From positions 124,001 to 188,000 of IMG/VR virus record IMGVR_UViG_3300031576_000001: 64,000 nt of DNA; one strand, given 5' to 3'. Positions 4,107 through 63,981 of this stretch are shown piece after piece. The stretch's first letter is position 1; each line of letters begins with the position of its first letter. A program made the translations under genes and the position numbers. The notes under the pieces were generated by a model. That model saw only the letters and a program-made list of their open reading frames with translations. It did no database searches and was not told the origin of the DNA.

Positions 4107-4790
4107 ATGGCAGGCATTGAAACTCGTTACCCGTACAAGGTCGGAACGTCGAGCCAGACCCACTCGGTGGTGTCGCAGAAGAACAAAGTCTACTCGTACC
4201 AAGTCGGGAAGAATCAATACCAGCAAATCGGGGTAATGACCACGTTTGGACTCGACGAGTCTCGCACGGTGGACGTTGTTCGGGGTGTGGGTTTTGGTGA
4301 CCAGATTGCCGAGCTAGTCCCCGGTAACACGGAACCTGTGAGCATTTCCGTAGAGAAGACCTTGCTGTACCTTCTGAACCTATTTCAGGCCATGGGGTAC
4401 AAGGGTGGTGTTGACGGTCTAGCGCGTTCACTCAAACACCACCGCTGGCCGTTTGACATCAAGCAAGAAATGGTGTTCTCGGAGCTAGCTAGTATTGATG
4501 CCCAAGCCTACCCAGGTGCAAAAGCCGCTTCTATTGGTTTCCTCCAACCCGGTATGACTCTCGTACCACAAGAGGTGAAGGCGCTCTTTACCATCTTTGA
4601 GGCGTGCTGGTTTGAGCAGTACGGAACCAGCTATGGCGCGGATCAAGGCATGGTAGCAGAGTCCTCTTCGATTAAAGCCTCAGATGTAGTAGACGGAACA
4701 TCGCAGTACGGTGAGTATATTGACACAGGACTTGCACCAAACATCCAAGGTGCCGGTGCTGGAAAAGGATTCTCCATACGCTTCGGTTTA
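4107..4790 (+). CDS. putative tail tube protein
   Basis: Size, beta-rich character, 'GDQIAELVPG', 'PFDI' and 'EACWF' resemble gp19-like tubes; precedes chaperones and tape measure. First in-frame TTA 4788-4790 (standard code ends 4805). Confidence 0.7.
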
Positions 4791-4834
4791 CCCCTCTTAG
4801 TGTAACCCCATTTTCGTGGGAGTCCCAAATACAG

Positions 4835-5728
4835 ATGAAAACACTAAATAGCTCGATTCTTGACTCCATTCTCGCCCAAGGTGCGAACCTCGGTATCGTA
4901 GAGGAGACCTTGGTTATCCAGGGTCTTACGCTGGTTCTGCGTAGCCTACGCCCCTCGGAGCACCAAGCAGCGGCACTGGCTCTCAAAGAGGTAGACGAGA
5001 ACGACTACCTCTACGAGCACATGCTGGAATACGTCTCCCGGTCCATCGTCGCCGTCAACGGTACGGACCTTCGCGGCGTGGTCACCATCGCTACCGAAGA
5101 GGAGGACGACAAGGGCAACCTACGCAAGGTCAAGCGTGAGCTACATGCCTACCTCAGAACCCACCTTGTCAGCACTTGGGGCAGAGAGGCGCTGACTACG
5201 TGCTACAGGAAGCTCCTAGAGGTCTTTGACCACGCTGAGGAAGAGTCCAAGAAGGGCGTGGTCTTCCACATACCGGACGAGTCTGGCGACGAGAAGATCC
5301 GCAGGCTTCTCACGGAGCTACGTGAGGCTACCCAGGAGGTGCCCCACGACCTAGCCAGGCGGCTCCTAGAGGAGCACGGGTTCTACCTGGGCGCTGACAA
5401 GGAAGAGGTTGAGAATGTCGAGGCTAAGCTAGCCTCCCTGTCACCCACAGAGGAAGCCCCTGCGCCGGTAGCTGAGCCTGTAGCCCGTGTCCCTGTGTAC
5501 GCTGCTACGCCCGCGGTCAGCCCTGGTCCTCCTACGGACGACGAGAAGGTGACTTCAACCAGGGCACAAGAGGCGGCTGACCTGGAGTCTCTTCCCGGTG
5601 ACCTACCCTCTCCCGGCAAGTCGGGCACCCCTGTGGTGGCACGTCAGGCGCCCCGTAGCATCGTCGGGCTAGACGCCCCTCCAAAGGGGGGGATCAACCC
5701 CAGGTTCGCTAGTCCGAGGCGTGCGTGA
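4835..5728 (+). CDS. putative tail assembly chaperone
   Basis: Between tube and tape measure; 'LRSLRPSE' motif; Pro/Ala-rich disordered tail. Confidence 0.55.
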   Translation: MKTLNSSILDSILAQGANLGIVEETLVIQGLTLVLRSLRPSEHQAAALALKEVDENDYLYEHMLEYVSRSIVAVNGTDLRGVVTIATEEEDDKGNLRKVKRELHAYLRTHLVSTWGREALTTCYRKLLEVFDHAEEESKKGVVFHIPDESGDEKIRRLLTELREATQEVPHDLARRLLEEHGFYLGADKEEVENVEAKLASLSPTEEAPAPVAEPVARVPVYAATPAVSPGPPTDDEKVTSTRAQEAADLESLPGDLPSPGKSGTPVVARQAPRSIVGLDAPPKGGINPRFASPRRA

Positions 5729-6987
5729 CAAGTGCTGCCTCTGTCAAAGAGGCATATGAGCGTGAACAAGAAAAGCTACGACACGAAGGCAACCTAGAGG
5801 ATGACGACAGTTCGTTTCCTCTCCCCCAGGAGCCCGAGGTGGACCCCCGGGTCTACAAAAGTGTTGAGCCGCTCTTGTTCCGTGGCTTTCTTGCGTTGCC
5901 TGCCACGCTGGGCGATAACCTACGGGTCGTCTACAAGAGCCTCAACCACCATGAGTATGAGCGCCTACAGCTAACCCATGGGTCAAGGGACACTGACTTT
6001 TACGTAGACTTCCTGGCGCAGTCCACGTACCTCTTGGGGGGTCAGAACGTACTCTCTTGGGAGCACCGTGAGAAGGTCAAGCGGTTTTATGGGGAGGTGC
6101 CCCCTCCATTGCGTAACCGGATCTTGACCACGCTCTCTGAGTTGAACCGGCAGGCCAGTGACGGGGTGCGGCTCGTCGAGGCGTACGCCATGGAGACCCT
6201 CTCTCGGCTACGGTGGGTTCAATTGTACGGTCTGGACCTCACGTCAACGGCGGTAACGGGGGTAGAGGGCTCTTCCTTGCTGGGGTACAACTGGGGTCAG
6301 CTTCTCTGGCGGGCATTGAACCGGTACCAGGACACCCGAGAGGACATGGACAGGCATTGGGAGAACGCCAAATTCATCGGGGGGTGCTTTGCAGGCAAGG
6401 GTATCAACAAGGTCCATAACCAGGACCGGCGCCGCAAGCGCGAAGAGATTGAGAACCGTATCGCGCGGAAGGACCAAATCTTGCGTGAGGTTGTGCTACT
6501 TGAGAAGAGCCCTGAGAGGCGTGTCATGCGGGACGGGCACGTAGTCAAGTCAGCTCAAACGACCGAGGAGCTAGCCACCCAGCTTGAGCAGTCACTAAAG
6601 GGTGAGGAGGACTTTCACGACCGGGTTGTACGGGCTGTCGAAGAGTACCACGCCAAGGTCAGGGTTGACCGTGAGGCTGAGCTACAGCGGCTCTATGACG
6701 AGGCTGCCAGCAAGGCACAGGGTCAAGGGCTCACGGGCATTGTGGACCGTAAGGGTCTCTCCCGCGAAGAGGTTGAGCAGCGTATCGCCCGGACGAGGGC
6801 GATCATGGCTCAAGGAACGGCACAGAGAATGGTACGCCCCCCGCCGCCTAGTGAGAACCCCTACGAGCGTTTCCGTCAAGCGCCCGAGCAAAGCGAGCAA
6901 AGCGAGCAAAGCGAGCAAAGCGAGCAAAGCGAGCCTGGTAGCCCCAAGGGTGAGGTTCGTCCTTTGCCCCCTCTTAGGTCAAGATTA
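5725..6987 (+). CDS. putative second tail assembly chaperone
   Basis: GTGA-coupled to upstream gene; 'YKSLNHHE' resembles the motif in 4835; first in-frame TTA 6985-6987 overlaps the tape-measure ATG as TT-ATG (standard end 7011). Confidence 0.55.
6886..6934 (+). repeat. 9-bp tandem repeat GAGCAAAGC x5 (EQS repeats)
   Basis: Five perfect copies plus GAGC, directly visible. Confidence 0.95.
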
Positions 6988-9900
6988 TGGCAAAGGACAC
7001 TGAGGTTCTGAAGTTTGCGGTCGAGCTAGACCCCAAGAAGGCTATCAAGGCTGCCAAACAGCTACAGACCTCTTGGCAAGAGCTTCAGAAGATACCCAAG
7101 GACTACGCCAAGGACAGCAAGAAGTCCCTTGAGGGTGTGCTCACCAACTTCAATAAGCTCACTCGCGGGATGGAGGACTTCAACAAGGCGGCACTCCAAG
7201 CCAAGAAGAACCCCTTCTTGGATTCCAGCCAAAAAGGCGCCATTCAGAAGACCAAAAACCTGAGCCTGATGTTCGCCAGGCTTAACCACCAAACCAAGGC
7301 GCTAGCCAAGGCAAGGGAGAAGGTACAAGCTAAGTGGGACGACGCTAAGGCAAGCGGGGACACGGCTGAGCTAACTAAACAAGCCAGAATCCTGGGGGAC
7401 ATGGAAGCCAAGGAGCAGAAACTCCTGGCGGCTTTTCAGAAGGAAGCTAAGGCTGCTTCTTCGATTGCAGCGGCGTCCAAGGTGGCGGTAGCCGCTTCAG
7501 CGCAAATACTCAAAGAGGCTAGCGAGAATCTAGAGGAGTATGAGGAGCGCTCGGTCAAGCGTGCCAGTGAGCTACGCAAGGAGCTGATGGGTTACGGGGG
7601 TGAGGAGTTTGGTAAGGACTTCACAGAGAACCTGGAGGGGGGTATGTCTGCCCTAGCCTCTAAGTCAGGGGGTGATTTTGCTAAGTCTGTCATGGGACTC
7701 CTCAAGTCCGGGGGGAAGGGACTAGCTGGCATTAGTACAAGAATGCAAGCTAAAGCTGCTATAACCGGCAAGGAGCCCGGCATGATGGGCAAAGCTGCTG
7801 GGGCGGCTGGCGCGGGTATCGGTAAGATTATGGGGGTATTCTCCAAGCTCGGTCCAGTTATAGGGCTGGTCTCTTCTGCTGTGGTGGGTCTGGTCAAGCT
7901 ATTTATAGATGCGCAAGCCGCTGCCAAGGAGTTCAACAAGGAAATACTCACGGGTGCCTCTACGGCTGAGTTTCTGGCCGCGTCCGGGGGTAAGAGCGCC
8001 ATAGCGTTTGCCAACTTGGAGGACACCATGAAGCAGCTACGGGACGCCGCGTTTGACTACACAACCAATACAGACCTTGGAATATCAAGCAAGGAGCACG
8101 CAGCATTCACCAACACACTGGCCAAAGAGGGTGTATCCCTCAAGCAAATCACAGACGAGGCTGCGCGCTCCAATAAAAGCGTGGGTGACTTTGAGAAGAC
8201 CTTGATTACCTCTGGTGTTGTGTACTCCCGTGTTTTCGGGGTGTCTCTGGACGAGATTGCCTCACTTCAGGCTACTATGCAGGCGGACCTGGGTGTTTCA
8301 TTGAAGACCGCAACCGACCAGTTTGCTGAGATCAATATCGCGATGAAGGACTCGGGTATTGCCGCAAACAAGTTCTTTGGTATCGTGCGTAACCTCTCAT
8401 CCGACATGGGTTTTTTCAATCTTCGTATGGCTGAGGCTGGTAAGCTCTTGAAACTTGTGAGCAAGAGCATGAACGCCAAGCAAGCGGAGAAGTTCATTCA
8501 GAACCTCTCCGGGCACTTCAAGGGCCAGAGCTACGCTGACCGTATCCGTGCAACGCTGGTAGCTGGCAAGGGTCAAAAGGGTGGCGCCATTGCTACAGCC
8601 AAGAACCTGGAGGGTGAGCTACAGGGCAAGATCAAGACCCTTGCCACAGAGGCTCAAGGTAAAGGGGTGAACCCAGAGGGTCTACGTAAAGCTATTGCCG
8701 CTGGGGGTAAAGACCTCACCGACTTTATGGCAGCTAATGCAGAAAAGATGACGGGTGCCATGCGTAGTGAGGTTATAGATGCCTCCAAGCAGTCCCAGCT
8801 TGTCCAGGGTGGCAAGAAAGGCGACCTCTTCAGCTCTGCGCGTGGTTTGAAGAACGCGGGTCCAATAGCCGCCCTCAAGCAATTGGACTCCATTGCTGGC
8901 AATATGTTCGAGGGTAAGAAGTTCAACGAACTTTCAGGGAAAGAGCACTTTGCAATGACTAACCTCCCTGGAGGCGGGACGGAAGAATTGATGGACGAGG
9001 TTGACAAATTCCGCAAGGGTGTTGCGGTGTCAAAAGCGGAGATGCTAAACAAAATCAAAAACGACAAGGCCCTTAGTGAGGATGAGGGGCGTTTGCTCGC
9101 ACAGCTAGGGCTCACGGGTAAGAGCAAAGAGGAAATCTCTAAGGGCGTGGCTGGTGCAGACGAGGAGGACTTTTTCAACTCCATGTCAGCAGATCAAAAG
9201 CGTATTGCACTAGAGGGTGAAAACGCTACGGACTTCGCTAAGAAGCAAACGGGTCTAACGGACACATTGATTTCTAAGCTAGAGCGCCTCAGTGAGTTCT
9301 TGATGAATAAGTATTACAATATAATCGTAGACGTGTATGATGCACTTACTGACATGCCTGGTATGGGGGGCTCCTCTAGGAAAGAGCAAATACGTCAAGA
9401 GACTCTTTCTATGGGCGGTGGGAAACAAATGCTAGACATGCTCACAGGGGGTAGAGGCACTCTGCAAGGCTTGCAAGCTAGCTACTCTAAGGAAACGGAC
9501 CCTCAGAAGCAAGCACAACTGGCTATAGACGTGAACAAGCAACAGATGGCAGTAAACGAAGCCTCTGGAAAAGTGTTGAAAGCTATTACAGGTAAGGGGG
9601 GCACTTTCGGCATTGGGACAAGCGATGCTGAAATGGCTCAGAAGGCGGGTGTGAAAGCTGGGCTATCTGAGGACATGAATCGTAACTTTTCGACGTGGAT
9701 CAAAAAAGGGAAAACAGGAGAAGAAGCTGCAAAGCTCGCTGGTCTCTCTGATGATCAGATGGCAAGAGTTGCTGCGGAGGCTATGAAGACAATGGATGTT
9801 CAAGCTCTTCGGACAGTAACAAGTTGGGGTGTAACAAACACGGGTGTTGGTGCCACCCCTACTGCTAGCACCCCAGGCACTACCCAGGAGCTACCACCGC

Positions 9901-10445
9901 CAGCGCCCGAGGCACAGAAAACTGCCGAAGAGACCGCCAAAGCCGCACAAGCCCAGGTCGCAGCTACCGAGGAGCAAACCAAGGTTCTTGACACCAAGGG
10001 CATCAAGCTCGACAAACCCTTCCTCAAGACCAAGATTGGTCCTCAAGTAGAGGAAAGTACCCTCTCGGCGCTACGTACCGCCCTCTTTGAGTTCTACGTT
10101 CTACAACATACACCGCTGGCAGACGTGGCTGAGGCGATCAAGGGGGGTCTGGACCCCAAGAGCGCAGGCGAGAAGCTAGTCGCCGGCATGAAAGAGCAAG
10201 GCAGTGCATTCAATGCTGGCGAGACCGTCAAGGCTAACGCAGCCGGAGGCACCGTCATGCGTCCCGCCCCAGGTGAAGCGTTTGCCTCCGTAGCCCCAGG
10301 GGAGACAATCGTACCCAAAGGTGGCGGCGCGGGGGGCATCACGATCAACGTCAACGTAGGGGGCGCACCGCTCGCTACGATCATCGAGGGTAAGGTCAAA
10401 GAGGGTATCGAGATTTGGCAACGCCGTGAGGCGATGAGAGCCTTA
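6987..10445 (+). CDS. tape measure protein
   Basis: ~1150 aa, Ala/Lys/Gly-rich and helical, with central hydrophobic segment; first in-frame TTA 10443-10445 followed by CCCC-GTG of next gene (standard code runs to 10733, a 284-nt overlap). Confidence 0.85.
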
Positions 10446-20595: not shown

Positions 20596-20745
20596 TAAGC
20601 TGTCTTGCCTGTCTTCGTAAAACGCCTTGGGTTGAACACGCCACCATGGGGTAACCTGGCTACGTTCCTCTTCGCTCATGCCGTGCCAGAGGGCGTCCAG
20701 TCTGTCGATGAGGGTCAGGGTACCTACCCGCTGGTGACTACCCAC
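20596..20745 (-). CDS. small hypothetical protein (start uncertain)
   Basis: 'IDRLDALWHGMSEEER' looks protein-like; first in-frame TTA lies 14 nt before the next ATG at 20581 (standard code runs to 20332). Confidence 0.35.
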
Positions 20746-23204: not shown

Positions 23205-23353
23205 GGTACGCGCTTACTACACCAAGCAAGAGCACCCTTGGCAAGAAAAGGAAAATAACGACCCGACCCGACAGGTGGTGCTCTAGTGAGGGTGGTGACT
23301 CTTCCGACTACACACACTGGCCCTGGCTTTACCCTTGTGCTACCAAAGCGGGA

Positions 23354-52000: not shown

Positions 52001-53188
52001 GGCGTCAAGGTCAAGTGGAACCCTGTCCTTGGACGGTGGGGTCTGGCGGTCTCTCTTGTGTGGTCCGGTCACGGGGCGGCTCAACTTTACCAGACCGGGT
52101 GGAATGTCAGGTCTCTTCTCGACGAGCCGGCAACAACCCTTGGGGTGGGTGTCCGGGTAGGTCGCGACTTCGGTTTGACTGTGGGAACTGCGTACCGCCA
52201 GCCTGGAATGCGCTTCTTGACGCAGAGGCTCACCCCCCTCTTTGGTCTCACGGCGCCAGACTTTGCATCTAGCTTGCCCCAGGTTATCGCGGATACCGTA
52301 ACCTTGGTCAACTCCTCTCAAAACGCCAAGGTGGGCGACCTCTTTGCAGTTGCAGGGAGAGGGCCAGGGGGCACAGATATTCGCAGAACCGCCACCCTTT
52401 TCGGGGGCGCGGCGCTGGACAATGCCAGCGTGGACATGCCGTGGAATGACGCAACGAACGCCATTGATGTGGCAGTGGGTGATTATGACGCTGTGCCCCC
52501 GGACGGAACCTTTACTGTTGTGGGACGCCTCGCTCAGTACAATTTGCTGTTCAACGAAGGCGCTGGCGTTACCTATACCGCGACAAGTCTTACGGATACT
52601 GATGTCTTCCCAGGGTTCATTACCATGGGAGTGCAACCAGGGGACCGTGTTTACGTGGGCGGTAACGCTTTGGTCTACGTGCTGTCCGTGGCGCCCACCG
52701 TGCTCACCACAACACCCTTTGGGGTGCTCCCCCCCGCAGGCACGCACTACACGGTCACACGTCCCTCCTCTTACCTCTACAACCTGAAGTCCTCGCTAAG
52801 CACAATCTTGCTCACGGGTGACGTGGATGCCGCTACCCAGCGCACCCCCCTCTTGGAGTCTACCGGGGGACACACCCTGGAATTCCTACCCAGAGAGGAC
52901 GTGTTCCTGATTACGCTTGGGTACGGCACGCCTTGTGTAGAGGTAGACGGAGCCGAAGGCGTCGCTCTAAGTAACCTCACCCTCGGGGGTAGCCAGGACA
53001 TCACGGTCAAAGTAGCTCAACACCCCTGGCTTGCTCAGTCCGGGCTTGCCGTGGGCTGCGTTGACTCCGGCTCCCCCCTCTACCCCAAGAGACCTTCTCT
53101 GGCTTTCAGGTTCCCCGTGCCTAGAGAAGCCCCCGTGACGCTAAGCAATGTGGTAAGCCGCACCAAAATGCGGTACAAGGGAGTCTTA
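46097..53188 (+). CDS. very large tailspike/fibre-like protein
   Basis: 'VHLRRGEYRLTSTVTVPPGVKITGEG' beta-helix entry motif and many 'W.G..Y.V.W' propeller-like repeats; first in-frame TTA 53186-53188 follows ~2360 TTA-free codons. Confidence 0.7.
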
Positions 53189-53191
53189 GCC

Positions 53192-53809
53192 ATGGGCGCC
53201 ACCCTCTACCTCATTGACCTTTACAACGACGAGATCAATGCAGCCCTGTCGGACAGCGCCGCTGCCCTGACCAGCAAAGAGGTCACCGGGAACTACGTCA
53301 TCCCCTACGGGCTCTCCCTACCCCTCTTGGCGCCCCCTACAAGCCGAGCCAACTTGCTCTTGCAGAAGCATCAAGGGCTCCTGGCCATGCACCCTGGCTT
53401 TACGAACCAAGCCTACGATGACTGCCTGGACGCCAACGGCTTTGACCTGACCTACCCCTTCACCCTCGGCTCTTTCGGGGAGCGGGGCTCTATCAAGTTC
53501 AACACGGCGCAAACCGTCATGGTGCCGCTGGCGTTCGCGCCAGCCCAGGTCGTTCTCAACTTCGAGCCGTACACGTACAGCGACAGTGACAACGCGACGG
53601 GCTTGTACCAGCGAACCTACCAAGAGGTTGCACCCTCGGTCTTTACTGCCACGGCGAGCTTCAACAATGGGGCTACCTTCGTTAGCCTCTTGGCAGGCGG
53701 TTTGGAGAGCATCCCCCTGGCAGACCAAGGAAACCAGTTCATTCTGAGGCTGACACTGGCGTTCCCTGGTCCTCACGTCGGGCTTGCAGGTTGGTCCTTG
53801 CTATACTAA
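53192..53809 (+). CDS. hypothetical structural protein (205 aa), separate gene under TTA-stop reading
   Basis: AAGGGAG SD at 53177-53183, then TTA-GCC-ATG; fused in frame to 46097 under the standard code. Confidence 0.6.
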   Translation: MGATLYLIDLYNDEINAALSDSAAALTSKEVTGNYVIPYGLSLPLLAPPTSRANLLLQKHQGLLAMHPGFTNQAYDDCLDANGFDLTYPFTLGSFGERGSIKFNTAQTVMVPLAFAPAQVVLNFEPYTYSDSDNATGLYQRTYQEVAPSVFTATASFNNGATFVSLLAGGLESIPLADQGNQFILRLTLAFPGPHVGLAGWSLLY

Positions 53810-53822: not shown

Positions 53823-56800
53823 ATGAGTAACGACAACCTGGGACCAGGGGTCTCTCGTGTTCTCGACCCCACGTCAACACAGTACGACCTCGTTGTCTGG
53901 CAAGCGGACAAGCCTCCGCTCGATTCCGAGCTGAACCTGCTTCAACAGCTAGCCACGCAAGGGCTAGCTCAGTCCCATCACGTCAACACGCCCTCCGGGT
54001 GGCTCTCCAACAGCACCAACCCCAGCGACGTTTACGAAACCAACCCCCTCTGGTCCAACTGGTTCAAGTTTGGTCACCAAGGCTCTGGCGAGAAACGTGC
54101 CATCCCCTGGGCTGTCGTCAACGGGTGGTATATCCCGGTCACCGCTACCCAAACAGGCACCCCCCCGGGTAGCGCAGACAACACAGCGACTTGGAACCGG
54201 GTTACACTAGACCCCCCTCCCCTGAACGCAGGGGACAAGCGGGTTGACTTCATTTTCCTAGAGGCGTGGCGAGCCCGCGTACCCACGGGGGTTGCCGCCT
54301 CTAAGCCAGAGGCCGCCTCCGTGTACCGCTTTGGTAACGTAGAGGGGGGCACGTCCTACCTACCCGACGACCTACAAGACCCTGAGATCGGAGTCGAGAC
54401 TACCCAGAGGGTACAGGTTCAGTACCGGCTCAGGGTAGTCACGGGGCTTCTAGGGCTCGCGGCGTACCCTGATGGTTTTGACATCACCAAGGTTTTTGCG
54501 AGGGGGCTAGCTGCCGTACCTGGGAGCTACACGTTCGCCAACATGAGGCAAGAGCTAGGTGACCCTGGGCTCTGGCGCGCTGGTGACGGCTCGCTACCTG
54601 CCCAGACCGCCCTTGGCACGGTAGACGGCTACACTTACGCAATCCCGCTGGCTTTCATCTTCCGGCGCAACGGAGTGGCGTGGAATGGTGACCCCTTCGC
54701 TAACTTGAATGGGGGGGTCAATCGCAACCCTACGGCCACCTCTCGGGCGGGTTTCAAGACGTTTTCTGCGATGCCCACGCTGGCAACAGATTTGTCGTCA
54801 ACAAGTTTGTCGTCAACTTTGTCAGCCTACACGGCGAACACGTTGCCTTTGCCAGCCACCCCTACCTCTCCGGTGCTCCTCAAGATTGGGGACGAGCTAG
54901 TCACCTACCAAACCGTCTCAGGCACGACGTTGACGCTGGTAGCCCGTGGGGTCAACGGTACCAGGGCAGAGACCCACAAGGCGGGCACGCCGGTAGAAAT
55001 TGTGCCTGGGCGACCCGATGGTTACTTTGCAGACCAGATTGCAGCCACGGACATTCTGGACGCTAGGCACGTCGTAAGCCCCCAGGGGTTTGACTACAAC
55101 GCCCTTCTTAGGGGGGCACTAGGCAAGCTCCTGAGAGGGGACTTGCAGGCTAATTGGAAGAGTGCAGATCAGACCCAGGGTCCGTGGCTTCTCTACCAGG
55201 ACAAGGTAACAGATGGGGCGGTGGCCCTCGGGGTAACCAAGCTGGACGGTCCTAACCTTGTCAGGCGCGTTTGGAGTGACGCCTCTACGCTGGAAACGGT
55301 GGACACCCACGTCACCCCTTCGCCTGGCATCGTCCCCGGTCCCGGGGCAGTTCAGATTGCAACCCCGTGGTCCTTGTCGCTACCCGCAGAGACCACGTTT
55401 CAGTCGGTACCGAATGAGTTTAACTCAGGGGACATTATCAGGATTCAGCCTAACGCCTTTCAGCAAGGGCTAGGCGCGGACACCGACCAAGTACGGTTTG
55501 TCAACGATGGCTTGGCTGGGGCGGTACAGGTTCGTATCCGAGGTCAGTCCTTTTCGATAGACCCCATTTTCATCACAGTAACCCCCCTAAACCCCAACCC
55601 TGGAGACCCTCTAGTCATTACCTTTGTGGGTTCTGGGATCTACCCCATTGCGGGCGACGTGGCGATCACGGTGAGGGTGCTGTACGGACCCGGTAGAGGC
55701 ACGTCACGCAAGTTTGACAGCGTACACTCCCTGGCGATGCTGACGAATGCCGGGGGTGAGTACCTCTTGGCGGGTCCGACAGTACCGGCTAGCAACGTGC
55801 CGCTTCGCGCGGCTTGGCTCCCTCTGTGGTCCAGGTTCCGTAACACCCTCTTTGCAGGACAATGGCCCACTACCGCAGAGGCTTACGCTGACGCTTCTAG
55901 CAAGACGGTGGCTATCCAGCCTTTCCGTCGCATCACGTTCCCCCAGGCAGTAACGCAGGACGGCAACGCCGTAAACGGTTATGGTAACGTGACCTACGTG
56001 GGTGCAAACGCTACCACCAATGGCTCAGACACCCTCAGTAAGGTGGATGGCACCTTTGCCGGCTTTCTGGTGGGTTTTGCCCTGGTCATTACGAGTGGGC
56101 CCGCCAAGGGTCGTTACACTGTGACAGCCGTACCCAATCCTCTACAAGTACAGGTTGAGGGCATCTTGCCCTCAACACTGCCTCTAGGTATACCTGTATC
56201 AGCCTTCCACTTTGAGGACGCACGGGGTATCATGCCCACGGTGGACAGCAACTTGCTGCCAAAGTGGGTTACCACGGACCCCTTGGGGCTATTTGCTGGG
56301 AGTGTCATTGGACCGCTCAACAACGCATTCCAGCGGAACCTGTACGTTACACTGCCCCGTCACCTTGTACCGGGGTGGGGTGACATTCTCTCCCCGGTCA
56401 TGTTGCCCGGGGGCTCTGTGGTGTTTGACGAGGGTGTCAACTTCGGGTTGCAGTCTAAACAGGGTAGCGTCTATTCGGATACCAACCACAACCCACAGTA
56501 TATCAACTACGTTAACGCACCCTACACTAACGCGGTCTTCTCGACGCACAACCTCACTTCCCTGCCTGGTACGGTAGCGGCGACATACAACGCGGTTACA
56601 CCCTCTCCGGGTGTAGCGGGTGCAAGGTTTTACTCTGACCCCACGGGTAGAGCGGGCGTCGAGCTACCCCCGTTCTATGGTGTGGCTCGCCTCTGGGCAG
56701 TGTACGAGGCTCAGGACTACCTGACCAATGGCAGCGCTTACGTTAGTGCGACGAGAAGCCCACTGGTCATTGGAAGCCCGGCTCAGAACCTTCTACGGCA

Positions 56801-58142
56801 AAACTTTGAGGGTCCGTTCTTCTTCATCACGAAGGACGATGACGGTGACAGCACGTTCGTACTCAACGCCAACGCGCTGGACCTCAGCAAGTCTACCCTC
56901 GTACCCATTCCCACCTTTACCGCAGGACGGTACGTTATCGAGGCGAGCATCTTCGGTTTTGACCGTAACTCGTTCAACGTAAACTCAGATTTCCGGCTTG
57001 TCCTCTCGCGAAACCGCACGCTGGCGAACAGCTCTGGACCGCTACGCAGCGCTAATCTGGGCGTTACCCTCCCTGGGGTGACGGCGATACTCCCTGGACC
57101 TTTGGCTGCCTCTGACGGCGTGGTCATCAATTACAGTCGAGCGGCTTACCAGGGCGATGCTTGGGGTAGTGAGACGACTTACACGGACACTGCGCAGCGC
57201 ATGGGACCGCTAAGTTCCGTTGATGCATACCAGCTAAGCGCCACACAACTTGACCAGAACGCCCTGACGCGACCTTACCAGAAGCCCCTAGAGGTTCTCG
57301 CCTCTGTGTCATTCCAGACCACGGCTGGCACGGGTAGGTTGGGGATGGAGGCATCGTCGGGTCTAAATGTGCTGAACATTGGGTACGAAAATCCCGCGGT
57401 CTACCCACCACCCTCCCCCGTGGCGGCCCGTCCGAGGAGCATTCTTGGCGCGCTGGTGGGCATCACTGAGTCCTACGGTACAGACCTGTCAGCGTGTACG
57501 TCCAGGCTACCTCTTGGGGGTCTCTTCCGCGATAAAGACTTCCGGGGTGAGCCGGTAGCCACGGGTAAGTCAGCCTTCGTCGTGGAGCCTGGCGAAACGA
57601 ACCTTGGTCTAGCCTCACTGTCCCCAAGAGGGCGCCAAGAGGTAAGGGAGCTACCTGTGACCCCCGTAACGTCTTGCAGCGGAGAGGCTGGTGACGTGAT
57701 TGTCCACGTTGACGGCGAGCAGTCAAGCTACGTGCCCCTTGTGAACTATCGCACCACGCGGGGGGGCTCTTTGTACAGCGCGACGTTGCCCCGTCCGGGT
57801 GGCGAGGTCTCTGCCAGGATGAGCCAGATCACAACGCCCGTAGCCAACCACCCCAACGTGCTCTCTGTCAAAGCCCTGCTTGTTCGCAACGCTTTGACTC
57901 AGAACGGGTTCGGTGAGGTCTCTTCGGGTGGGGAGCTTATGATGCTCATTGCTACCGAGGTTCACCGGCTGAACGTCTCTGGAATCCTGACCGCTACAGG
58001 GGGCGTGACTATCTCGACCAATGGCACCAAAGAGGGTTACAGCGCCGCTGATCTATACCGGATCGAGGGTCGCCCGCTAGAGTCAGACCACGTAGGGCTC
58101 AGGGTCAACCCCTTTGGTATTACCCTGACAAGGCGTGCATTA
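53823..58142 (+). CDS. large tail fibre/baseplate-attached protein, paralog of 41303
   Basis: 'VVWQADKPPLDSELN' N-terminus; first in-frame TTA 58140-58142 (standard end 58148). Confidence 0.7.
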
Positions 58143-58160: not shown

Positions 58161-58409
58161 TAAGCCCCCTTTGACCGTGTAGCGTAGAGGGTGGGGCGCT
58201 GTCGCGGGCTGCGTGGGGCTGCGCCCTTCAAGCGAGGCGCACCACGCGAGCGTGACCCGGGCTTCCTCTTCGGAGGGGGCTTCTACCTCGTCGAGATACC
58301 AGAGCTTCTTTAGCCAGGCCGGCGCCCGGTATACCAGGCAGAACAGGTTGTCCCACCACCGGGTATTCTGGTTTGCTGGGTCCACCGTGAAAACGTGCTT
58401 GGTAGCCAT
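58161..58409 (-). CDS. hypothetical protein
   Basis: ATG at 58409 after GAGG; first in-frame TTA 58161-58163. Confidence 0.55.
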
Positions 58410-58420
58410 GAGGTAACCTC

Positions 58421-58720
58421 TCAGGGGGTAACGGTTTTCTTGCTCTGGCGCGGGAGGCTGATACGCCCGACCCCGCGGATCTTGGCGAGCGCCGCACAAG
58501 CCTCTTTGAGGCTGCTGCACTCTTTGACCGCTTTGCAGGCAGTACGGCAGTCGTAGATCGTCCAGGCAATGTACTTGACCGGACCACCGCCCAGCTTAGC
58601 GTGTCCAGACCAGTAACGCCCCACCTCGAAGCTGACCATGTACGCCTGGTCGGCGGTCTTGTACGCCCTCTCCCCCCAGGGGATGAGCTTCTCGGTCTTG
58701 GTGCTGTCGGTGGTGTCCAT
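58421..58720 (-). CDS. hypothetical protein
   Basis: ATG directly after the conserved promoter motif. Confidence 0.65.
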   Translation of the reverse strand: MDTTDSTKTEKLIPWGERAYKTADQAYMVSFEVGRYWSGHAKLGGGPVKYIAWTIYDCRTACKAVKECSSLKEACAALAKIRGVGRISLPRQSKKTVTP

Positions 58721-58912: not shown

Positions 58913-59299
58913 CTAGGTAGGCTCACCAAGAGGGTTGCGTTCGTTGTAGAGCCGGCAAGCGGTCTCGTGGGTACAGGGGAGACGTTGCCACCAAAGAACC
59001 CCCTTGTCGGGCACGCTGGTGTACCCCCAGAAGGTGTTCTCTCCCTCGTAGGGGACGGCGGGTACAAGCCAGCCGATCTGGTCACCCTCCCCGCTAGCGT
59101 AGGGGCTACGCCAGCCGGGGTCGTGGCTCTTGGCTTGGGCTTTCTCAGCGCAGAGCGCGCAGAAGAGGTCCGTGTAGTTTGCGCAAGTGTTGTGCTCACG
59201 CCACAGGCGGACGTCCCTCGCGCCGCACCCGTCGCAGGCGTAAGCCTGGGGTGTCGCCGGGTTCTGGTAGCTGAAGTCTCGGAAGTTGCGTTCTGGCAT
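58913..59299 (-). CDS. zinc-binding hypothetical protein
   Basis: CDGC...CALC plus Trp-rich 'GDQIGWLVPAVP...WGYTSVP'. Confidence 0.7.
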   Translation of the reverse strand: MPERNFRDFSYQNPATPQAYACDGCGARDVRLWREHNTCANYTDLFCALCAEKAQAKSHDPGWRSPYASGEGDQIGWLVPAVPYEGENTFWGYTSVPDKGVLWWQRLPCTHETACRLYNERNPLGEPT

Positions 59300-59768
59300 A
59301 GCCCTCAACTACACCGAGGATCTCTTGGGCTGCCGTGATGAGGTCTGAGGTGAGACCTACCCGGGGGTCGGTTTGCAGGAAGTTAGGACTACCTACAAAG
59401 AGGGGTAGGTCATCAATCACCACGTAGGTTTGGCATGGCGTAAGGTGAGCTTGAAGGAACCTGCGGATTTCCTGGGCCTTATTGGGTGTACCTGTGCGTG
59501 GGGTAACGTGGGCTAGTTCCCCGAGAAAGCCGTGGGTTGAGAGCCACCCTTGACACTGCTCGACGGAGAACAGGGGGTACCAGTGAGAGGAGAGCACGAA
59601 CACTACGCCCTCTTGGACGAGACCATTAAGGAGGCACACCTTGGAGGTCATGAGGAGTCGCCCGGGGTAGAAGCTGTCCACGTCCCGCTGGCGACTTTGG
59701 CGGCAAAGGTGCTCCGTGGTGTTGAGCACACCGTCAAAATCCACGAGAACGAAGCGCGGTAGGGTCAT
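59241..59768 (-). CDS. HAD-family phosphoesterase (Swiss-Army-Knife RNA-repair type)
   Basis: DFDGVLN, VLSSHW, K..EI and YVVIDD motifs; first in-frame TTA 59241-59243 (standard end 59196). Confidence 0.75.
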
Positions 59769-59819
59769 GTGGGTTAGACTCCTTCTGTACACCCTCTGAG
59801 AGAGGAAAGGTTACACACG

Positions 59820-61061: not shown

Positions 61062-61409
61062 ATGACCACGATAGCTGAACGTGTTGCCAGTCGCGCCGCC
61101 GCCTCTCCGCAGAACGGAGTGCAGTGGGTACGTGATGAGATCCTCATTCAGAAGTGCTCTACGGGGAAGACACCTATCGTCGAGGTCGCGGCGTACTTGC
61201 ACAACATCATCAAGAGCAGCCAAGAGATACACAAGCTGCTTAGTGAGGCTACAAAGAATGCCCAGGATGCCGTGAGTGGTGGCGACACTATCACGGCTCA
61301 GGATTTGGAGAGGGCGATCTACAAAGAGGCTGTGCTGCCGGCGGGGGGTGAAGACCCTCTGGGCAAGCTGCTCGCCAAGGTGATTGCCCATGGGGACTAC
61401 GTTTACTTA
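61062..61409 (+). CDS. hypothetical protein
   Basis: ATG 2 nt after upstream TAG; first in-frame TTA 61407-61409 (standard end 61448). Confidence 0.65.
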
Positions 61410-61996
61410 CCCTTGGCTTTGGAAACGGGCGCAGTCCCCTTCTTGTGACTACGTGCCTTGACGGGTTTGAAGTGCTCAGGGGGTGGCTCCCTGGGTCGCT
61501 TGATCTTGGTGACGGGCTTAGCTGACGGGTCGAGGAGGTTGATTGCCTGGCAGAGGTTCTCTGAGCAAAGACCTAGCGCCGGGTTGACCTTGACGAGGCG
61601 GGGGGCGTAGTCAGGCATGAACTTGAAGACCTCTTCGCTGTCCAGGGCGACCCAAGAGGTTGCGGGGTGCTCAGCGAGGAACCTGCGGATCGTGGTGGCT
61701 TTGGCGGGCTCTAGCTTGTGATTGACCAGGGCAGACACTTCCCCAGTAAAGCCGTGGCTTTTCAGGTGCGTGTTTAGCTGCTCCACGTCATACCGTGCCC
61801 ACCACCGAGAGGTCACCACGACCTTACCCTTACCTACCAAGTAGTTCAGCCTGCGAACTAGAGGAGGGCAGAGGCGTTGAGCAGGTTGTCTCTTGAGCCC
61901 CTCTGGTGACAGCCTCTTGGCTAGGTTGCTCAGGTACACAGGGGTATTCAATACCCCATCCAGTTCTAGGAAGATGAACTTTACGGGCTCCGTCAT
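61403..61996 (-). CDS. degenerate HAD-family (Swiss-Army-Knife type) paralog
   Basis: ELDGVLN (first Asp replaced by Glu), VVTSRW, WVALDS. Confidence 0.7.
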   Translation of the reverse strand: MTEPVKFIFLELDGVLNTPVYLSNLAKRLSPEGLKRQPAQRLCPPLVRRLNYLVGKGKVVVTSRWWARYDVEQLNTHLKSHGFTGEVSALVNHKLEPAKATTIRRFLAEHPATSWVALDSEEVFKFMPDYAPRLVKVNPALGLCSENLCQAINLLDPSAKPVTKIKRPREPPPEHFKPVKARSHKKGTAPVSKAKGK

Positions 61997-62066
61997 GGTT
62001 TTCAGACTCAGAAAGTACACCGAGGTAGCCTCTTCGCCTGAGAGGGGGTAGCCTTAGCCTTTAGCC

Positions 62067-62663
62067 ATGAGATACCGAGTCCTCCTTGCTGTTACCCTCT
62101 TCGCCCCCACCGTGCTCGCCCAAGACCCTGTGCAAACCGAGAACCCCGCGGCTTGTACGTCGGACAGTGTTTGCATACCCAGGGAGGATCTAGCTGTTTT
62201 CGTTCAACTTTTGAAAGAGCGGCAGTGCTTGGTACGCACCAAGCCTGAGATTACCCTCTCGCCCATCCCGCTGGTCATTGACCGACAGGGTAGAGTCTAC
62301 GGAGAGACAAAGACCACCCTACTCATACAATGGTGTAACTTTGAGATTACAGGGGGTGGGCCCGTCAAGATTGACGTGGCGGTACAGGATGAGCCCGTGC
62401 CCCCACCACCCAAGCCGTCCCTCTGGCAGCCCGCGCTAAGGCTAGGCGTGGGCTACACAGTGCAAGCCTCTTGGGATGCTTTCTTGCTAGTCTCCCCTCT
62501 GGCGTACCGGGGCGTGAGTCTCAACGGTCACGCTGGGGTGCGCTCCATAGGTGGCGGTTTGGGCTACGGTGTAACCTCTTACGGAGGCTTTTACGCTGGG
62601 TACAGCTACAGCTACGAGGGTAAGCACGGGGCTACGCTGGGCGTATACGGCCGGCTCTGGTTA
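62067..62663 (+). CDS. secreted / outer-membrane-type protein
   Basis: Signal peptide, Pro linker, amphipathic Gly/Tyr beta strands; ends in Trp at first in-frame TTA 62661-62663 (standard end 62717). Confidence 0.6.
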
Positions 62664-62674: not shown

Positions 62675-63298
62675 TAAGAGGGTGCTACCGACTAGAAAAG
62701 CGTCTTCACCAAGGTAGCGCTCGTACAAGGCGCTTAGCTCGTCGCAGGTTTGCTGGACTTGACTCTGGTAACTCTCGTCGATGCGACAACCCCAGAGGTA
62801 CAGCGACTTGTAGAGACCGTCCCTTGTCACGTTGTGGAGTGTGTTAGCCAGCGCTCCGTGCCCCAAGGAGTTACCAACCCCACCAAAACCGCGGGTAACC
62901 CCCCTACCCAGCGTCAACTCGCAACGGTACACGGCACCCTCTTTGGTGACCGTCACTTTGGAACCCAGCCTGTCCCTATCGCCCTTAGCCCAGAGGGTAG
63001 CCAGACTTATCGCCAGGTGCTCCATCCCAGGCACGTTTCTCTTTTTGTCCAAGAGAACCCGTCGCAGTCTGTTCCATTGGCTTTCACTGATACGGTCGGA
63101 CCAGAAGTTGTCTGCATAAAACCTGTCCCCCAGGTGCTCAAGGAACGCCTCTCGGTAGGACGCCCCGTTGGTTTTCCGCACCGGACCCTCTGCAAACCGA
63201 GCCGTGAGCGAGAAAAGCCCGTTTCGTTCCTGGCAGGTTAGCTGCCAGTCCCTCTTGACGTTGTTTATCACGATGGCTGTGCTCAAGTAATCCAGCAT
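62675..63298 (-). CDS. hypothetical protein
   Basis: First in-frame TTA 62675-62677 leaves an 11-nt gap to the convergent gene (standard end 62612). Confidence 0.6.
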
Positions 63299-63339
63299 GG
63301 CGTGTGGGGTCTCCAAAAGGGGTTCTGCACGGCTTTGCC

Positions 63340-63657
63340 ATGGTGGTACACCTTTTCCCGGCAGCTAGGGCTGTGCAACGCCGTATCGTAGCAAGATGGG
63401 TAGACAAGGGCACGCGAAAGCTGTCACGAGAGGTATACCGTCGCATCGGGGAAGACCCGCAAAGCGCTCAGTACCTCTCCGGGCTTCTACGGCGTCAAGC
63501 TGGTGACGTAGTGTCACTCCCCCCCTACGACCCCGCCCCGTTCAAGGAGATCGTAGACACTTGCCTCATGGTGACTGACCGTGACCCGGCGCGACTAAGA
63601 GACCTTGGATCAGCCTTGGACAGCCTGGCGCAAGCTGGGGCTAAAGCTACCGGGTGA
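63340..63657 (+). CDS. hypothetical protein
   Basis: Helical ORF filling the gap between flanking genes. Confidence 0.5.
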   Translation: MVVHLFPAARAVQRRIVARWVDKGTRKLSREVYRRIGEDPQSAQYLSGLLRRQAGDVVSLPPYDPAPFKEIVDTCLMVTDRDPARLRDLGSALDSLAQAGAKATG

Positions 63658-63702
63658 CAGCGGTGACGGGTGACAGCACGGTTTGCGGTATCTGCCGCGA
63701 GC

Positions 63703-63981
63703 TAAGCTCCAGATGTAGCTGAGGAGCCGGAAGAACATGCGCGAGACAAAGCCCTCTTCCTCGACGGGGCTTGGCGTCACGGGCGAGGGGGCGTCGTACA
63801 CGACCGGGGGTTCCTCTTCGGGTTCAGTCTGGACGCTGGGTTCCGTGGTCGTCACGCTCGGGGCAACCAAGGTGACGTGGCTCACGTAGAGTTTGCCGTC
63901 CCTACGGACCTCTTTGTTGGACACGGCGGCACCGAGGCGGGTACCGATGATGTGCGGGTGCGTACCGAAATGTGACGCCAT
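63703..63981 (-). CDS. hypothetical protein
   Basis: ATG after GAGGG; Pro/Glu linker and amphipathic C-terminal helix ending at first in-frame TTA 63703-63705 (standard end 63610). Confidence 0.55.

What the first reader, a model, noticed from the sequence alone, without database searches (positions are those of the whole stretch)
4788..63705. TTA (normally Leu) appears to be a fourth stop codon in this phage
Seen: scanning every 'tta' by frame in the confident genes (about 16,000 codons, by eye) found no internal in-frame TTA, although CTA, TTG, ATA and AGA are used freely. In 18 genes the first in-frame TTA lies at or near the expected end. Plus strand: 4788, 6985, 10443, 29144, 40600, 43907, 53186, 58140, 61407, 62661. 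Minus strand: 20596, 22645, 38415, 38708, 58161, 59241, 62675, 63703. Under the standard code many of these genes run on into non-protein-like tails overlapping neighbours (284 nt for the tape measure, 85 nt for 41303, 258 and 106 nt for convergent pairs). TAA, TAG and TGA still end other genes. Established: TTA=stop is known from Thraustochytrium mitochondria (NCBI table 23), whereas the phage recodings I know are stop-to-sense (TAG to Gln, TGA to Trp/Gly). Inference: a sense-to-stop reassignment in a phage or its bacterial host; I know of no described case. Alternatives: UUA is simply undecoded and ribosomes are rescued or drop off, or a systematic TAA-to-TTA base-calling/assembly artefact.
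Basis: partly seen in the sequence, partly recalled or inferred. Interest (0 to 1): 0.98.

Follow-up and report, generated by a model that had tools for sequence, protein, structure and literature searches.

The report
Jumbo phage uses TTA as stop
In this 322-kb environmental jumbo phage the leucine codon TTA is never used inside genes and instead ends about 30% of them, exactly where related phages have ordinary stop codons; this would be the first sense-to-stop change of the genetic code seen outside mitochondria and plastids.

Summary
The window is contig Ga0247727_10000022 / IMGVR_UViG_3300031576_000001, positions 124,001-188,000, from a phage-G-like jumbo phage with 58% GC.

- **Codon count:** In 16,955 confident codons TTA occurs 0 times against 88.8 expected (P~3e-39), although 317 TTA trinucleotides lie off-frame. 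All 60 other sense codons keep their standard meaning.
- **Homologues:** In-frame TTA sits at gene ends. Relatives have TGA/TAA/TAG within -1..+2 codons of the TTA at 10443 (45/45) and -2..+3 codons of the one at 43907 (43/44). TTATG replaces their TAATG/TGATG at 6985.
- **Same-frame split:** TTA at 53186 separates a 2363-aa gene from a 205-aa gene. That gene's 165 homologues are nearly all standalone proteins.
- **Wider genome:** Coding potential collapses after the TTAs. Across 193 kb of the genome, 56 of 183 genes end in TTA.
- **Not an artefact:** Three assemblies agree, and other phages from other samples share TTA stops, some at the same positions.
- **Mechanism unresolved:** I found no tRNA, tmRNA or release factor in 60% of the genome and no canonical RF motif in the whole contig. 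The favoured model is a host release factor with broadened specificity, as in organelles that read UUA as stop. The main rival is an undecoded codon resolved by rescue.

No phage or bacterial case was found in the literature.

The parts
4107..4790 (+). 227-aa conserved structural gene ending in TTA at 4788-4790
   Evidence: In-frame TTA, with a second TTA and a TAA 3 and 5 codons later. Homologues have variable C-termini about 10 aa longer, so this site is uninformative by homology.
5725..6987 (+). 420-aa gene ending in TTA at 6985-6987, forming a TTATG stop-start overlap with the next gene
   Evidence: Relatives have TGATGG/TAATGG at the same junction and converge on ~420 aa.
6987..10445 (+). 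1152-aa tape-measure-like gene ending in TTA at 10443-10445; the next gene starts at 10450
   Evidence: 45/45 relatives have TGA/TAA within -1..+2 codons. The 95-codon tail has a negative coding score (-0.51) and only +2-frame shadow hits.
20596..20745 (-). Doubtful 49-aa ORF ending in TTA (TAA on + at 20596-20598)
   Evidence: In-frame TTA confirmed, but the body coding score is -0.02 and the ORF is not in my gene model.
22645..23019 (-). 124-aa gene ending in TTA (22645-22647). The same triplet read on + is the TAA stop of the convergent gene 22243..22647.
   Evidence: Coding score 0.30.
23189..29146 (+). 1985-aa gene ending in TTA at 29144-29146
   Evidence: No in-frame TTA in 1985 codons against 51 off-frame. 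Tail of 34 codons scores -0.34.
38415..38708 (-). 97-aa gene starting at the ATG of a TTATG overlap and ending in TTA (38415-38417)
   Evidence: frame arithmetic from the sequence.
38708..38974 (-). 88-aa gene ending in TTA (38708-38710) in a TTATG overlap with the next gene
39439..40602 (+). 387-aa gene ending in TTA at 40600-40602
   Evidence: The sister phage L235 and L099 have TTA at the homologous position (offset 0), in a similar context CCC TTA TCC CC. Other relatives have variable C-termini.
41303..43909 (+). 868-aa gene ending in TTA at 43907-43909, in a TTATG overlap with gene 43909..46083
   Evidence: 43/44 relatives stop within -2..+3 codons. L084 also has TTA there. The tail has no homologues.
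46097..53188 (+). 2363-aa gene ending in TTA at 53186-53188
   Evidence: The next gene lies in the same frame two codons later (TTA GCC ATG). The standard code would fuse them into 2570 aa.
53192..53809 (+). 205-aa gene (TAA stop) separated from the upstream giant ORF only by TTA-GCC
   Evidence: 165 homologues, nearly all standalone 200-220 aa proteins aligned end to end.
53823..58142 (+). 1439-aa tail-like gene ending in TTA at 58140-58142, with a TAA two codons later
   Evidence: (weak phrog_1101 tail protein hit).
58161..58520 (-). 119-aa ORF ending in TTA (58161-58163); moderately supported
   Evidence: body score 0.11. It competes with 58421..58720 in my gene model.
59241..59792 (-). 183-aa gene ending in TTA (59241-59243)
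61062..61409 (+). 115-aa gene ending in TTA at 61407-61409, convergent with 61403..62020 (-)
62067..62663 (+). 198-aa gene ending in TTA at 62661-62663
   Evidence: (tail -0.42).
62675..63316 (-). 213-aa gene ending in TTA (62675-62677), convergent with the previous gene. Under the standard code the pair would overlap.
63703..64000 (-). 3' part of a 411-aa gene (it runs beyond the window) ending in TTA (63703-63705)

Best explanation
SHOWN by comparative genomics: in this phage UUA no longer encodes leucine. It marks the functional 3' end of about 30% of genes, alongside UAA, UAG and UGA. The code is therefore bacterial table 11 plus TTA = stop.

Ancestrally TTA was Leu. Relatives with lower GC use it at positions where this phage has CTC, CTG, CTA, CTT or TTG. 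The codon was first purged: many relatives with higher GC are TTA-free. It then reappeared at stop positions by single-base changes from TAA or TGA. It now interchanges with the standard stops at homologous gene ends among related phages.

INFERRED mechanism (about 45% of my belief): in the infected cell no tRNA-Leu(UAA) competes for the codon, and a class-I release factor with broadened second-position specificity recognises UUA and releases the peptide. An RF2 type altered in or near its SPF motif is the candidate, as proposed for labyrinthulean mitochondria and peDinoflagellate plastids.

The factor is more likely host-encoded than phage-encoded, for three reasons:
- 60% of the phage genome holds no tRNA, tmRNA or RF.
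- The whole contig lacks the canonical RF motifs.
- Sporadic TTA stops occur in several independent TTA-free phage lineages.

Because nothing but the triplet is conserved around the sites, the signal is the codon itself.
For: - **Codon statistics:** 0 of 16,955 in-frame against 88.8 expected, with 317 off-frame. The 60 other sense codons are standard.
- **Homologous stops at the TTA:** 45/45 at 10443, 43/44 at 43907, TTATG against TAATG/TGATG at 6985. Control genes with standard stops behave identically.
- **Same-frame splits:** the 205-aa family is standalone, and ThyX|TTA|CxxCxxCC splits cleanly in Pfam. SD plus start follow every apparently internal TTA that lies within coding sequence; the remaining case lies 5' of the true start.
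- **Coding potential:** +0.23 before and -0.24 after the TTAs.
- **Out-of-window confirmation:** 56 of 183 genes end in TTA over 193 kb, with near-zero overlaps under the four-stop model.
- **Not an artefact:** JGI, ENA and Logan assemblies agree.
- **Same trait elsewhere:** TTA stops occur in other contigs, including at homologous sites: L005, L084, L054/L092, L099, L235.
- **Ancestral meaning:** relatives' TTA codons align to window Leu in 1116 of ~2400 cases.
- **No special context:** no conserved flanking signal or structure.
- **No phage-borne factor found:** no tRNA or tmRNA, no Rfam family, no RF Pfam among called genes, no canonical RF motif in the contig.
- **Organelle precedent:** RF-mediated UUA termination (PMC12574857).
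Against: - There is no direct evidence of termination: no proteomics, Ribo-seq or release assay.
- The host is unknown. The only hint is that the sister phage contig is binned in a Lysinibacter MAG, and other relatives are binned with unrelated phyla, so binning is unreliable.
- No release factor with an altered motif has been seen.
- 40% of the phage genome was not inspected for tRNAs or non-canonical factors.
- Relatives use TTA stops only sparingly (0-3 per 20 kb). That would also fit a merely tolerated, inefficient terminator.
- Two of the 18 sites are weak, and two homology tests (4788, 40600) were uninformative because the C-termini vary.
Confidence: 0.85

Rival explanations
1. UUA is simply unassigned: the infected cell has no functional tRNA-Leu(UAA), either naturally or because it is destroyed during infection. 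Ribosomes stall at UUA and are resolved by drop-off, peptidyl-tRNA hydrolysis, ArfB-like or tmRNA rescue, with no release factor that specifically reads UUA. Genes still end there functionally.
For: The TTA-free state is common and polyphyletic among relatives, as expected for a codon with no decoder. Relatives have only a few TTA stops, as if they were tolerated and not favoured. No RF variant was found. Streptomyces phages are known to lack UUA because the host decodes it poorly (PMC10732093).
Against: 31% of genes, including giant structural genes and genes in TTATG translational coupling, end in TTA. In E. coli with an unassigned UAG, stalled ribosomes give read-through, frameshifting and degradation tagging, and this obstructs viruses that carry that codon (PMC6207430 abstract). 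That would be costly at this frequency. There is no excess of nearby backup stops after TTA compared with normal stops.
Confidence: 0.3
2. A phage-encoded factor in the unseen 40% of the genome, or among the many unannotated proteins, makes UUA a stop during infection. Candidates are a divergent release-factor-like protein, a tRNA mimic, or a nuclease that removes tRNA-Leu(UAA). This would also shut off host genes that contain UUA.
For: Most proteins of this phage have no Pfam or PHROG hit. Jumbo phages can carry RF genes. The window phage uses TTA stops far more than any relative.
Against: No canonical RF motif (AGGQHVN / RSQHKNK) anywhere in the 322-kb contig. No tRNA, tmRNA or Rfam RNA in 193-210 kb. 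The trait is scattered over independent lineages, which fits a host property better.
Confidence: 0.15
3. TTA is still Leu and a very rare, slowly decoded codon (bldA-like regulation). The post-TTA tails are translated, giving C-terminally extended or fused proteins.
For: Rare UUA with regulatory roles is established in Streptomyces (PMC10732093). Some tails are short (1-5 codons) and would be harmless.
Against: Homologues end at the TTA. Tails lack coding potential and conservation and overlap downstream genes by up to 284 nt. Same-frame neighbours would be fused, giving 2363+205 aa and ThyX+CxxCxxCC. There are zero TTAs at any internal position in ~58,000 codons of the four-stop model.
Confidence: 0.04
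4. Ribosomes pausing at UUA shift +1 onto an overlapping UAG or UAA (TTA-G / TTA-A), so termination is really at a standard stop.
For: G follows 26 of 56 terminal TTAs, against ~10% after off-frame TTAs. A similar idea was raised for Streptomyces uORFs (PMC10732093).
Against: 29 of 56 sites are followed by C or T (UAC/UAU = Tyr), including the best-supported ones at 6985, 10443 and 43907. A follows only once.
Confidence: 0.03
5. Sequencing or assembly artefact converting TAA to TTA.
For: None beyond the single-base relationship between TAA and TTA.
Against: Identical sequence in JGI, ENA (MEGAHIT) and Logan assemblies. The errors would have to know reading frames on both strands. TTA sense codons are also missing. 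Other phages from other samples share TTA stops.
Confidence: 0.01

Closest known systems
UUA = stop in labyrinthulean (Thraustochytrium) mitochondria, NCBI table 23, attributed to substitution of the Ser of the RF2 SPF motif in mtRF2a (as summarised in PMC12574857)
   Same: The same codon changes meaning in the same direction (Leu to stop). The codon is absent internally and present at homologous stop positions. The standard stops are kept.
   Different: That is an organelle with a tiny genome and its own RF. Here it is a 322-kb dsDNA phage translated by a bacterial cytoplasmic system. No RF variant has been identified, and TTG stays Leu.
UUA/UCA = stop in peDinoflagellate plastids (pRF2 Ser204 substitution) and UUA/UUG = stop in Marsupiomonadales and Pseudoscourfieldia mitochondria (altered mtRF1a) (PMC12574857)
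   Same: Sense-to-stop reassignment involving UUA. The evidence is of the same kind (codon only at 3' ends defined by homologues). Over a third of genes use the new stop.
   Different: Those cases also reassign UCA or UUG. Here TCA (114 uses) and TTG (269 uses) remain sense. The paper calls the plastid case the first sense-to-stop change outside mitochondria; this one would be the first outside organelles.
Stop-codon recoding in phages (TAG to Gln, TGA to Trp/Gly in Lak, crAss-like and other huge phages)
   Same: A phage genome whose genes cannot be called correctly with table 11. Possible interplay between phage and host translation.
   Different: The direction is opposite (stop to sense). 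Those phages carry suppressor tRNAs and often RFs. Here no in-frame TAG, TGA or TAA occurs, and no tRNA or RF was found.
Rare UUA codon / bldA tRNA-Leu(UAA) of Streptomyces and TTA-free actinophages (PMC10732093)
   Same: Phages that completely avoid TTA as a sense codon because the host decodes it poorly. There is a weak hint of an actinobacterial host (the sister contig is binned in a Lysinibacter MAG).
   Different: There UUA is still Leu and is not used to end genes. The genomes are ~70% GC and poor in all A-ending codons, whereas this phage is 58% GC and uses CTA, GTA, ATA and CAA freely.
Unassigned codons (CGG in Mycoplasma capricolum, AGA/AUA in Micrococcus luteus; own knowledge) and unassigned UAG in recoded E. 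coli (PMC6207430)
   Same: A codon without a decoder that halts ribosomes. This is a plausible intermediate stage (codon capture).
   Different: Those codons are avoided altogether and are not used as regular gene terminators.

Membership tests
Sense-to-stop reassigned genetic code (UUA = termination; table-23-like) | The codon is absent from internal, conserved positions of coding sequences | tested here: met
   0 of 16,955 codons against 88.8 expected. TTA is the only sense codon never seen in conserved alignment columns. All apparent internal cases in 193 kb resolve into gene boundaries.
Sense-to-stop reassigned genetic code (UUA = termination; table-23-like) | The codon occurs where homologues have termination codons | tested here: met
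   45/45 at 10443 and 43/44 at 43907; TTATG against TAATG/TGATG at 6985; standalone homologues of the gene after 53186.
Sense-to-stop reassigned genetic code (UUA = termination; table-23-like) | No cognate tRNA (anticodon UAA) in the translating system | not testable with these tools
   No tRNA at all in 193 kb of the phage. The host genome is unknown.
Sense-to-stop reassigned genetic code (UUA = termination; table-23-like) | Release factor with an altered codon-recognition region (for example the SPF Ser in RF2) | not testable with these tools
   No canonical RF in the phage contig. The host RFs could not be retrieved.
Sense-to-stop reassigned genetic code (UUA = termination; table-23-like) | Protein C-termini end at the residue before the codon | not testable with these tools
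   Needs proteomics.
Stop-codon-recoded phages (TAG or TGA read as sense) | In-frame TAG or TGA inside conserved genes | tested here: not met
   TAA, TAG and TGA are all 0 in-frame in 16,955 codons. Standard-code ORFs are long and intact.
bldA-type rare-codon regulation (TTA = Leu) | TTA inside coding regions, aligning to Leu or hydrophobic residues of homologues | tested here: not met
   None in the window phage. This holds only in lower-GC relatives.
Programmed frameshift or bypass at a hungry codon | The conserved protein continues in another frame or after a gap downstream of the codon | tested here: not met
   Homologues terminate at the site. Tail hits are only shadows of the next gene. 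There is no conserved context.

The most novel reading that the evidence does not exclude
A bacterial host lineage, together with several independent lineages of phage-G-like jumbo phages that infect it, uses a previously unrecognised cytoplasmic genetic code: table 11 plus UUA = stop, read by an altered release factor. This would be the first sense-to-stop codon reassignment outside organelles. It has gone unnoticed because gene callers silently extend ORFs to the next standard stop, and code-inference tools cannot see sense-to-stop changes.
Probability: 0.45. Interest if true: 0.95.

Novelty: new variant of a known kind. Interest (0 to 1): 0.9.

Why it matters
All natural code changes known in bacteria and phages are stop-to-sense or sense-to-sense. 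Sense-to-stop has been seen only in mitochondria and, since 2025, in one plastid lineage.

- **Biology:** A phage or bacterial case would show that release-factor specificity, or codon loss followed by capture as a stop, can evolve in large genomes with thousands of codons at stake.
- **Evolution:** It would give a natural test of the codon-capture model. The intermediates are visible among the relatives: TTA as Leu, then TTA-free, then TTA-free with a few TTA stops, then 31% TTA stops.
- **Annotation:** Standard gene callers mis-annotate about 30% of this phage's proteins. Examples are the called 2570-aa, 1177-aa and 490-aa fusions, false C-terminal tails, and overlaps that are not real.
- **Applications:** It also points to a natural release factor or rescue route for UUA that could be useful for engineered codes and for phage-host incompatibility.

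Tried and rejected
- **DNA search against GenBank phages:** no match.
- **Pfam/PHROGs on the ten TTA-terminated proteins:** essentially nothing, so annotation could not define C-termini. I used relatives instead.
- **Homology test at 4788 and 40600:** uninformative, because the C-termini vary among relatives.
- **Relatives of the 46097/53192 region in IMG/VR:** none. The question was solved by the profile search.
- **Apparent 1172-codon run-on in L028/L030:** this was a bug in my stop-walking script. A normal TGA is present.
- **Search for a closer relative in JGI metagenomes:** nothing closer than ~68%.
- **Contig walk for tRNA, RF or tmRNA:** 193 kb covered and nothing found. One look-up was wasted on a wrongly guessed start codon.
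- **RecA as host probe against GTDB genomes:** no hit.
- **Structural-protein alignment against GTDB genomes:** MAG bins of five different phyla, so host inference from binning is weak.
- **Sample identifiers in the literature:** none found.
- **Rfam:** no family in 210 kb.
- **Phage-borne RFs elsewhere in IMG/VR:** they have canonical PxT or SPF motifs and sit in unrelated low-GC phages.
- **Sequence or structure context around TTA stops:** none found.
- **My three-stop gene model with permissive overlap:** it over-called spurious ORFs, so the overlap comparison is only qualitative.


Full report
**Source**

The window is positions 124,001-188,000 of a 322,633-bp metagenomic contig, Ga0247727_10000022 = IMGVR_UViG_3300031576_000001. 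It was also assembled independently as ENA ERZ27247320 k141_3047311 (322,662 bp) and as part of Logan SRR8536157_35623. It is a jumbo phage with 58.5% GC. Its nearest cultured relatives are Bacillus phage G (40% identity in a conserved 213-aa virion protein) and an acidobacterial jumbo phage at 34%. Most of its proteins have no Pfam or PHROG match. The exceptions in the window are UvrD_C, HNH, SLT and Baseplate_J.

**Checking the observation**

- TTA is not rare as a trinucleotide: 411 on the + strand and 397 on the - strand.
- In the long ORFs it is almost confined to frames 2 and 3. In-frame copies lie only near 3' ends.
- In 16,955 codons of 25 confident genes cut at the TTA, TTA occurs 0 times against 88.8 expected from position-specific base frequencies (Poisson P ~3e-39).
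- The only other absent codons are TAA, TAG and TGA. The next rarest sense codon, CAT, is used 35 times.
- A-ending codons are otherwise common: CTA 21% of CTN, GTA 22%, ATA 19%, CAA 44%.
- 317 off-frame TTAs lie in the same genes.
- The window is identical to separately fetched public copies over 49,349 nt, including 15 of the 18 sites.

Two sites are weak. Site 20596 rests on a 49-aa ORF with no coding signal. Site 58161 competes with another ORF.

**Do genes really end at TTA? Homologues**

About 200 related loci from IMG/VR, JGI metagenomes and GTDB MAGs were fetched.

- **Site 10443.** For the 1152-aa tape-measure-like protein, all 45 relatives whose alignment reaches the C-terminus have TGA or TAA within -1..+2 codons of the window's TTA. 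The next gene's homologue starts a few bases later. The 95-codon read-through tail gives only weak hits, and these always lie in the +2 frame of the next gene's homologue, so they are shadows of that gene.
- **Site 43907.** For the 868-aa protein, 43 of 44 relatives stop within -2..+3 codons of the TTA. Control genes with standard stops behave the same way.
- **Site 6985.** The window has TTATGG where many relatives have TGATGG or TAATGG stop-start overlaps. The same TTATG arrangement occurs at 43907 and at 38708 on the minus strand.
- **Site 53186.** TTA-GCC-ATG is all that separates a 2363-aa ORF from a 205-aa ORF in the same frame. A full HMMER search of 1.84 billion representatives found 165 homologues of the 205-aa protein. 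Nearly all are standalone proteins of 200-220 aa aligned end to end.
- **Uninformative tests.** Sites 4788 and 40600 could not be judged this way, because the C-termini vary among relatives.

**Independent lines of evidence**

- A codon-usage score trained only on genes with standard stops is +0.23 over the last 60 codons before the TTAs and -0.24 in tails of 8 codons or more. Held-out genes score +0.29 in frame and -0.67 off frame. The one positive long tail is the same-frame 205-aa gene.
- A Codetta-style tally shows that all 60 other sense codons align to their standard amino acid in conserved columns. TTA is never seen there.
- Where relatives use TTA, it aligns mostly to window Leu (1116 of ~2400 positions, with most of the rest hydrophobic). 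The window has CTC, CTG, CTA, CTT or TTG at those positions. So TTA was Leu ancestrally.

**Beyond the window**

By walking the contig I covered positions 41,510-234,664 (193,155 bp). All overlaps between pieces from different assemblies were mismatch-free.

- The pattern holds out of sample.
- A four-stop gene model gives 183 genes ending in TGA 63, TTA 56, TAA 35 and TAG 29, with almost no overlaps.
- Six standard-code ORFs seemed to carry internal TTAs. In five, the TTA is followed by a start codon, usually with a Shine-Dalgarno, in the same frame: TTA-CCC-ATG; TTA...AGGAGGGGCCAC-ATG; TTA...GGGAGAAGCC-ATG; TTA-GTG; TTA...GGAGGCAAGTGACC-ATG. In the sixth, the TTAs lie 5' of the true start.
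- For the called 490-aa protein, Pfam places ThyX wholly before the TTA and the unrelated CxxCxxCC family wholly after it.
- TTA terminators occur in replication, nucleotide-metabolism and structural modules, in giant and small genes alike. Their spacing to downstream starts resembles that of ordinary stops.

**Not an artefact, and not unique**

Three assemblies agree. More tellingly, other phages from other samples share the trait.

- Contig IMGVR_UViG_3300049491_000357 (L005/L084, 54.5% GC) has no TTA in ~7,900 homology-supported codons. It has TTA at the homologous ends of the 1152-aa, 213-aa and 868-aa proteins.
- L054/L092 have TTATG junctions.
- L099 and the sister phage L235 have TTA at exactly the homologous stop of the 387-aa protein, L235 in a similar context (CCC TTA TCC CC). 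L235 is a 205-kb contig in a Lysinibacter-labelled MAG, 71% identical, and joins the window with SH-aLRT 94.
- Among sister phages TTA and TGA interchange in both directions at orthologous gene ends.
- On a tree of the 213-aa protein, the TTA-free state is polyphyletic (at least 11 changes) and tracks higher GC. Sporadic TTA stops appear in several TTA-free lineages. The window phage is the extreme case at ~31%.

**Mechanism**

Only the triplet is conserved around the 56 sites. There is no flanking motif, no excess downstream structure and no excess of nearby backup stops. The next base is G in 26, C in 17, T in 12 and A in 1. A +1 slip onto UAG or UAA can therefore explain at most 27 of the 56 sites, and none of the best-supported ones.

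The phage carries no tRNA or tmRNA in 193 kb, no Rfam family in 210 kb, and no RF or aminoacyl-tRNA-synthetase Pfam among its called genes. A scan of all IMG/VR for the RF motifs AGGQHVN and RSQHKNK found 26 contigs. Neither this contig nor its TTA-stop relatives are among them. Phage-borne RFs that do exist elsewhere have canonical PxT or SPF motifs.

The literature held here describes UUA-to-stop only in organelles (PMC12574857):
- labyrinthulean mitochondria and peDinoflagellate plastids, both linked to substitution of the Ser of the RF2 SPF motif;
- UUA/UUG in some green-algal mitochondria, through an altered mtRF1a.

Streptomyces phages are known to avoid UUA altogether because the host decodes it poorly (PMC10732093). 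In E. coli with an unassigned UAG, stalled ribosomes are resolved by mistranslation and rescue, and this obstructs viruses that carry the codon (PMC6207430 abstract). Seven searches found no bacterial or phage Leu-to-stop case.

My best inference is that the infected cell lacks a competing tRNA-Leu(UAA), and that a release factor with broadened specificity, probably the host's, reads UUA. The main rival is a merely undecoded codon resolved by rescue or drop-off. The high frequency of TTA stops in essential, translationally coupled structural genes argues against that rival, but it is not excluded. A phage factor in the unseen 40% of the genome also remains possible.

**Comparison and novelty**

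Functionally this matches NCBI table 23 for the codon concerned. It passes the two sequence-level membership tests for a sense-to-stop reassignment: the codon is absent internally, and it is present at homologous stops. The tRNA, release-factor and proteomic criteria could not be tested.

It fails the tests for three other classes:
- stop-codon-recoded phages, because there is no in-frame TAG or TGA;
- bldA-type rare-codon use, because no TTA aligns to Leu;
- frameshift or bypass sites, because no protein continues downstream.

It is therefore a new variant of a known kind. The codon change is known, but this is a bacterial or phage translation system with a 322-kb genome, where it has not been described.

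**Verdict**

- The molecular mechanism and the host are unresolved.
- Interest is high.

Noticed in passing
window 22645-22647: The same three base pairs end two convergent genes. Read on + they are the TAA stop of 22243..22647. Read on - they are the TTA stop of 22645..23019. Because TTA is the reverse complement of TAA, a TTA = stop code lets convergent genes share a stop triplet. A near-equivalent arrangement occurs at 61403-61409.
   Followed up: partly
window, all genes; relatives: CTA is unusually frequent in this phage: 310 uses, 21% of CTN, about 1.8% of codons against ~0.6% in relatives. It is one of the main codons found where relatives have TTA, which suggests TTA was purged partly by T-to-C change to CTA.
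   Followed up: partly
covered contig 41,510-234,664: The tetranucleotide TTAA is strongly depleted. Only 38 of 881 off-frame TTAs in genes, and 1 of 56 terminal TTAs, are followed by A. This may be avoidance of a palindromic restriction site or a context effect.
   Followed up: no
window 1-772 (C-terminus of a 1602-aa gene, L219:10635-15443); window 2997-4103; L227:7062-9998; L231:5432-7987; L234:1-346: The genome is rich in inteins and homing endonucleases. A UvrD-like helicase carries an intein plus LAGLIDADG. There is an HNH endonuclease gene. A 978-aa protein, an N6/N4 methyltransferase and the ribonucleotide reductase alpha chain also show Hint, intein or LAGLIDADG hits.
   Followed up: no
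window ~6900-6960 (C-terminus of gene 5725..6987): A tandem Ser-Glu-Gln repeat (EQSEQSEQSEQSEQSE). The called product is 428 aa in the JGI assembly and 422 aa in the ENA assembly, which suggests repeat-number variation or an assembly difference.
   Followed up: no
window 23189-29146, 46097-53188, 53823-58142: Three giant genes (1985, 2363 and 1439 aa) have no Pfam hit. Only the last has a weak PHROG tail-protein hit. The 46097-58142 region has no relatives in IMG/VR, so it is probably a fast-evolving host-recognition module.
   Followed up: partly
L005/L084, L054/L092, L099/L023, L235, L144 and others: Several other jumbo-phage contigs from different samples are TTA-free and carry one to three TTA-terminated genes per 20 kb. 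The TTA-free state is polyphyletic on the tree of the 213-aa protein. The trait may be widespread and overlooked.
   Followed up: partly
contig 41,510-234,664: There is no tRNA gene in 193 kb of a 322-kb jumbo phage (aragorn and Rfam). Phages of this size often encode many tRNAs.
   Followed up: yes
L219:100-1101 (contig ~109.4-110.4 kb): A 333-aa protein matches Pfam PF25216 (Volactin), next to a Vsr/NUMOD3 endonuclease gene.
   Followed up: no
L230:1268-4801, L233:10564-12036, L229:11271-13013, L233:14764-15663, L226:18734-19327: Public gene calls made with the standard code fuse neighbouring same-frame genes across TTA (1177, 490, 580, 299 and 197 aa). The database proteins for this phage are therefore chimeric or extended.
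   Followed up: yes
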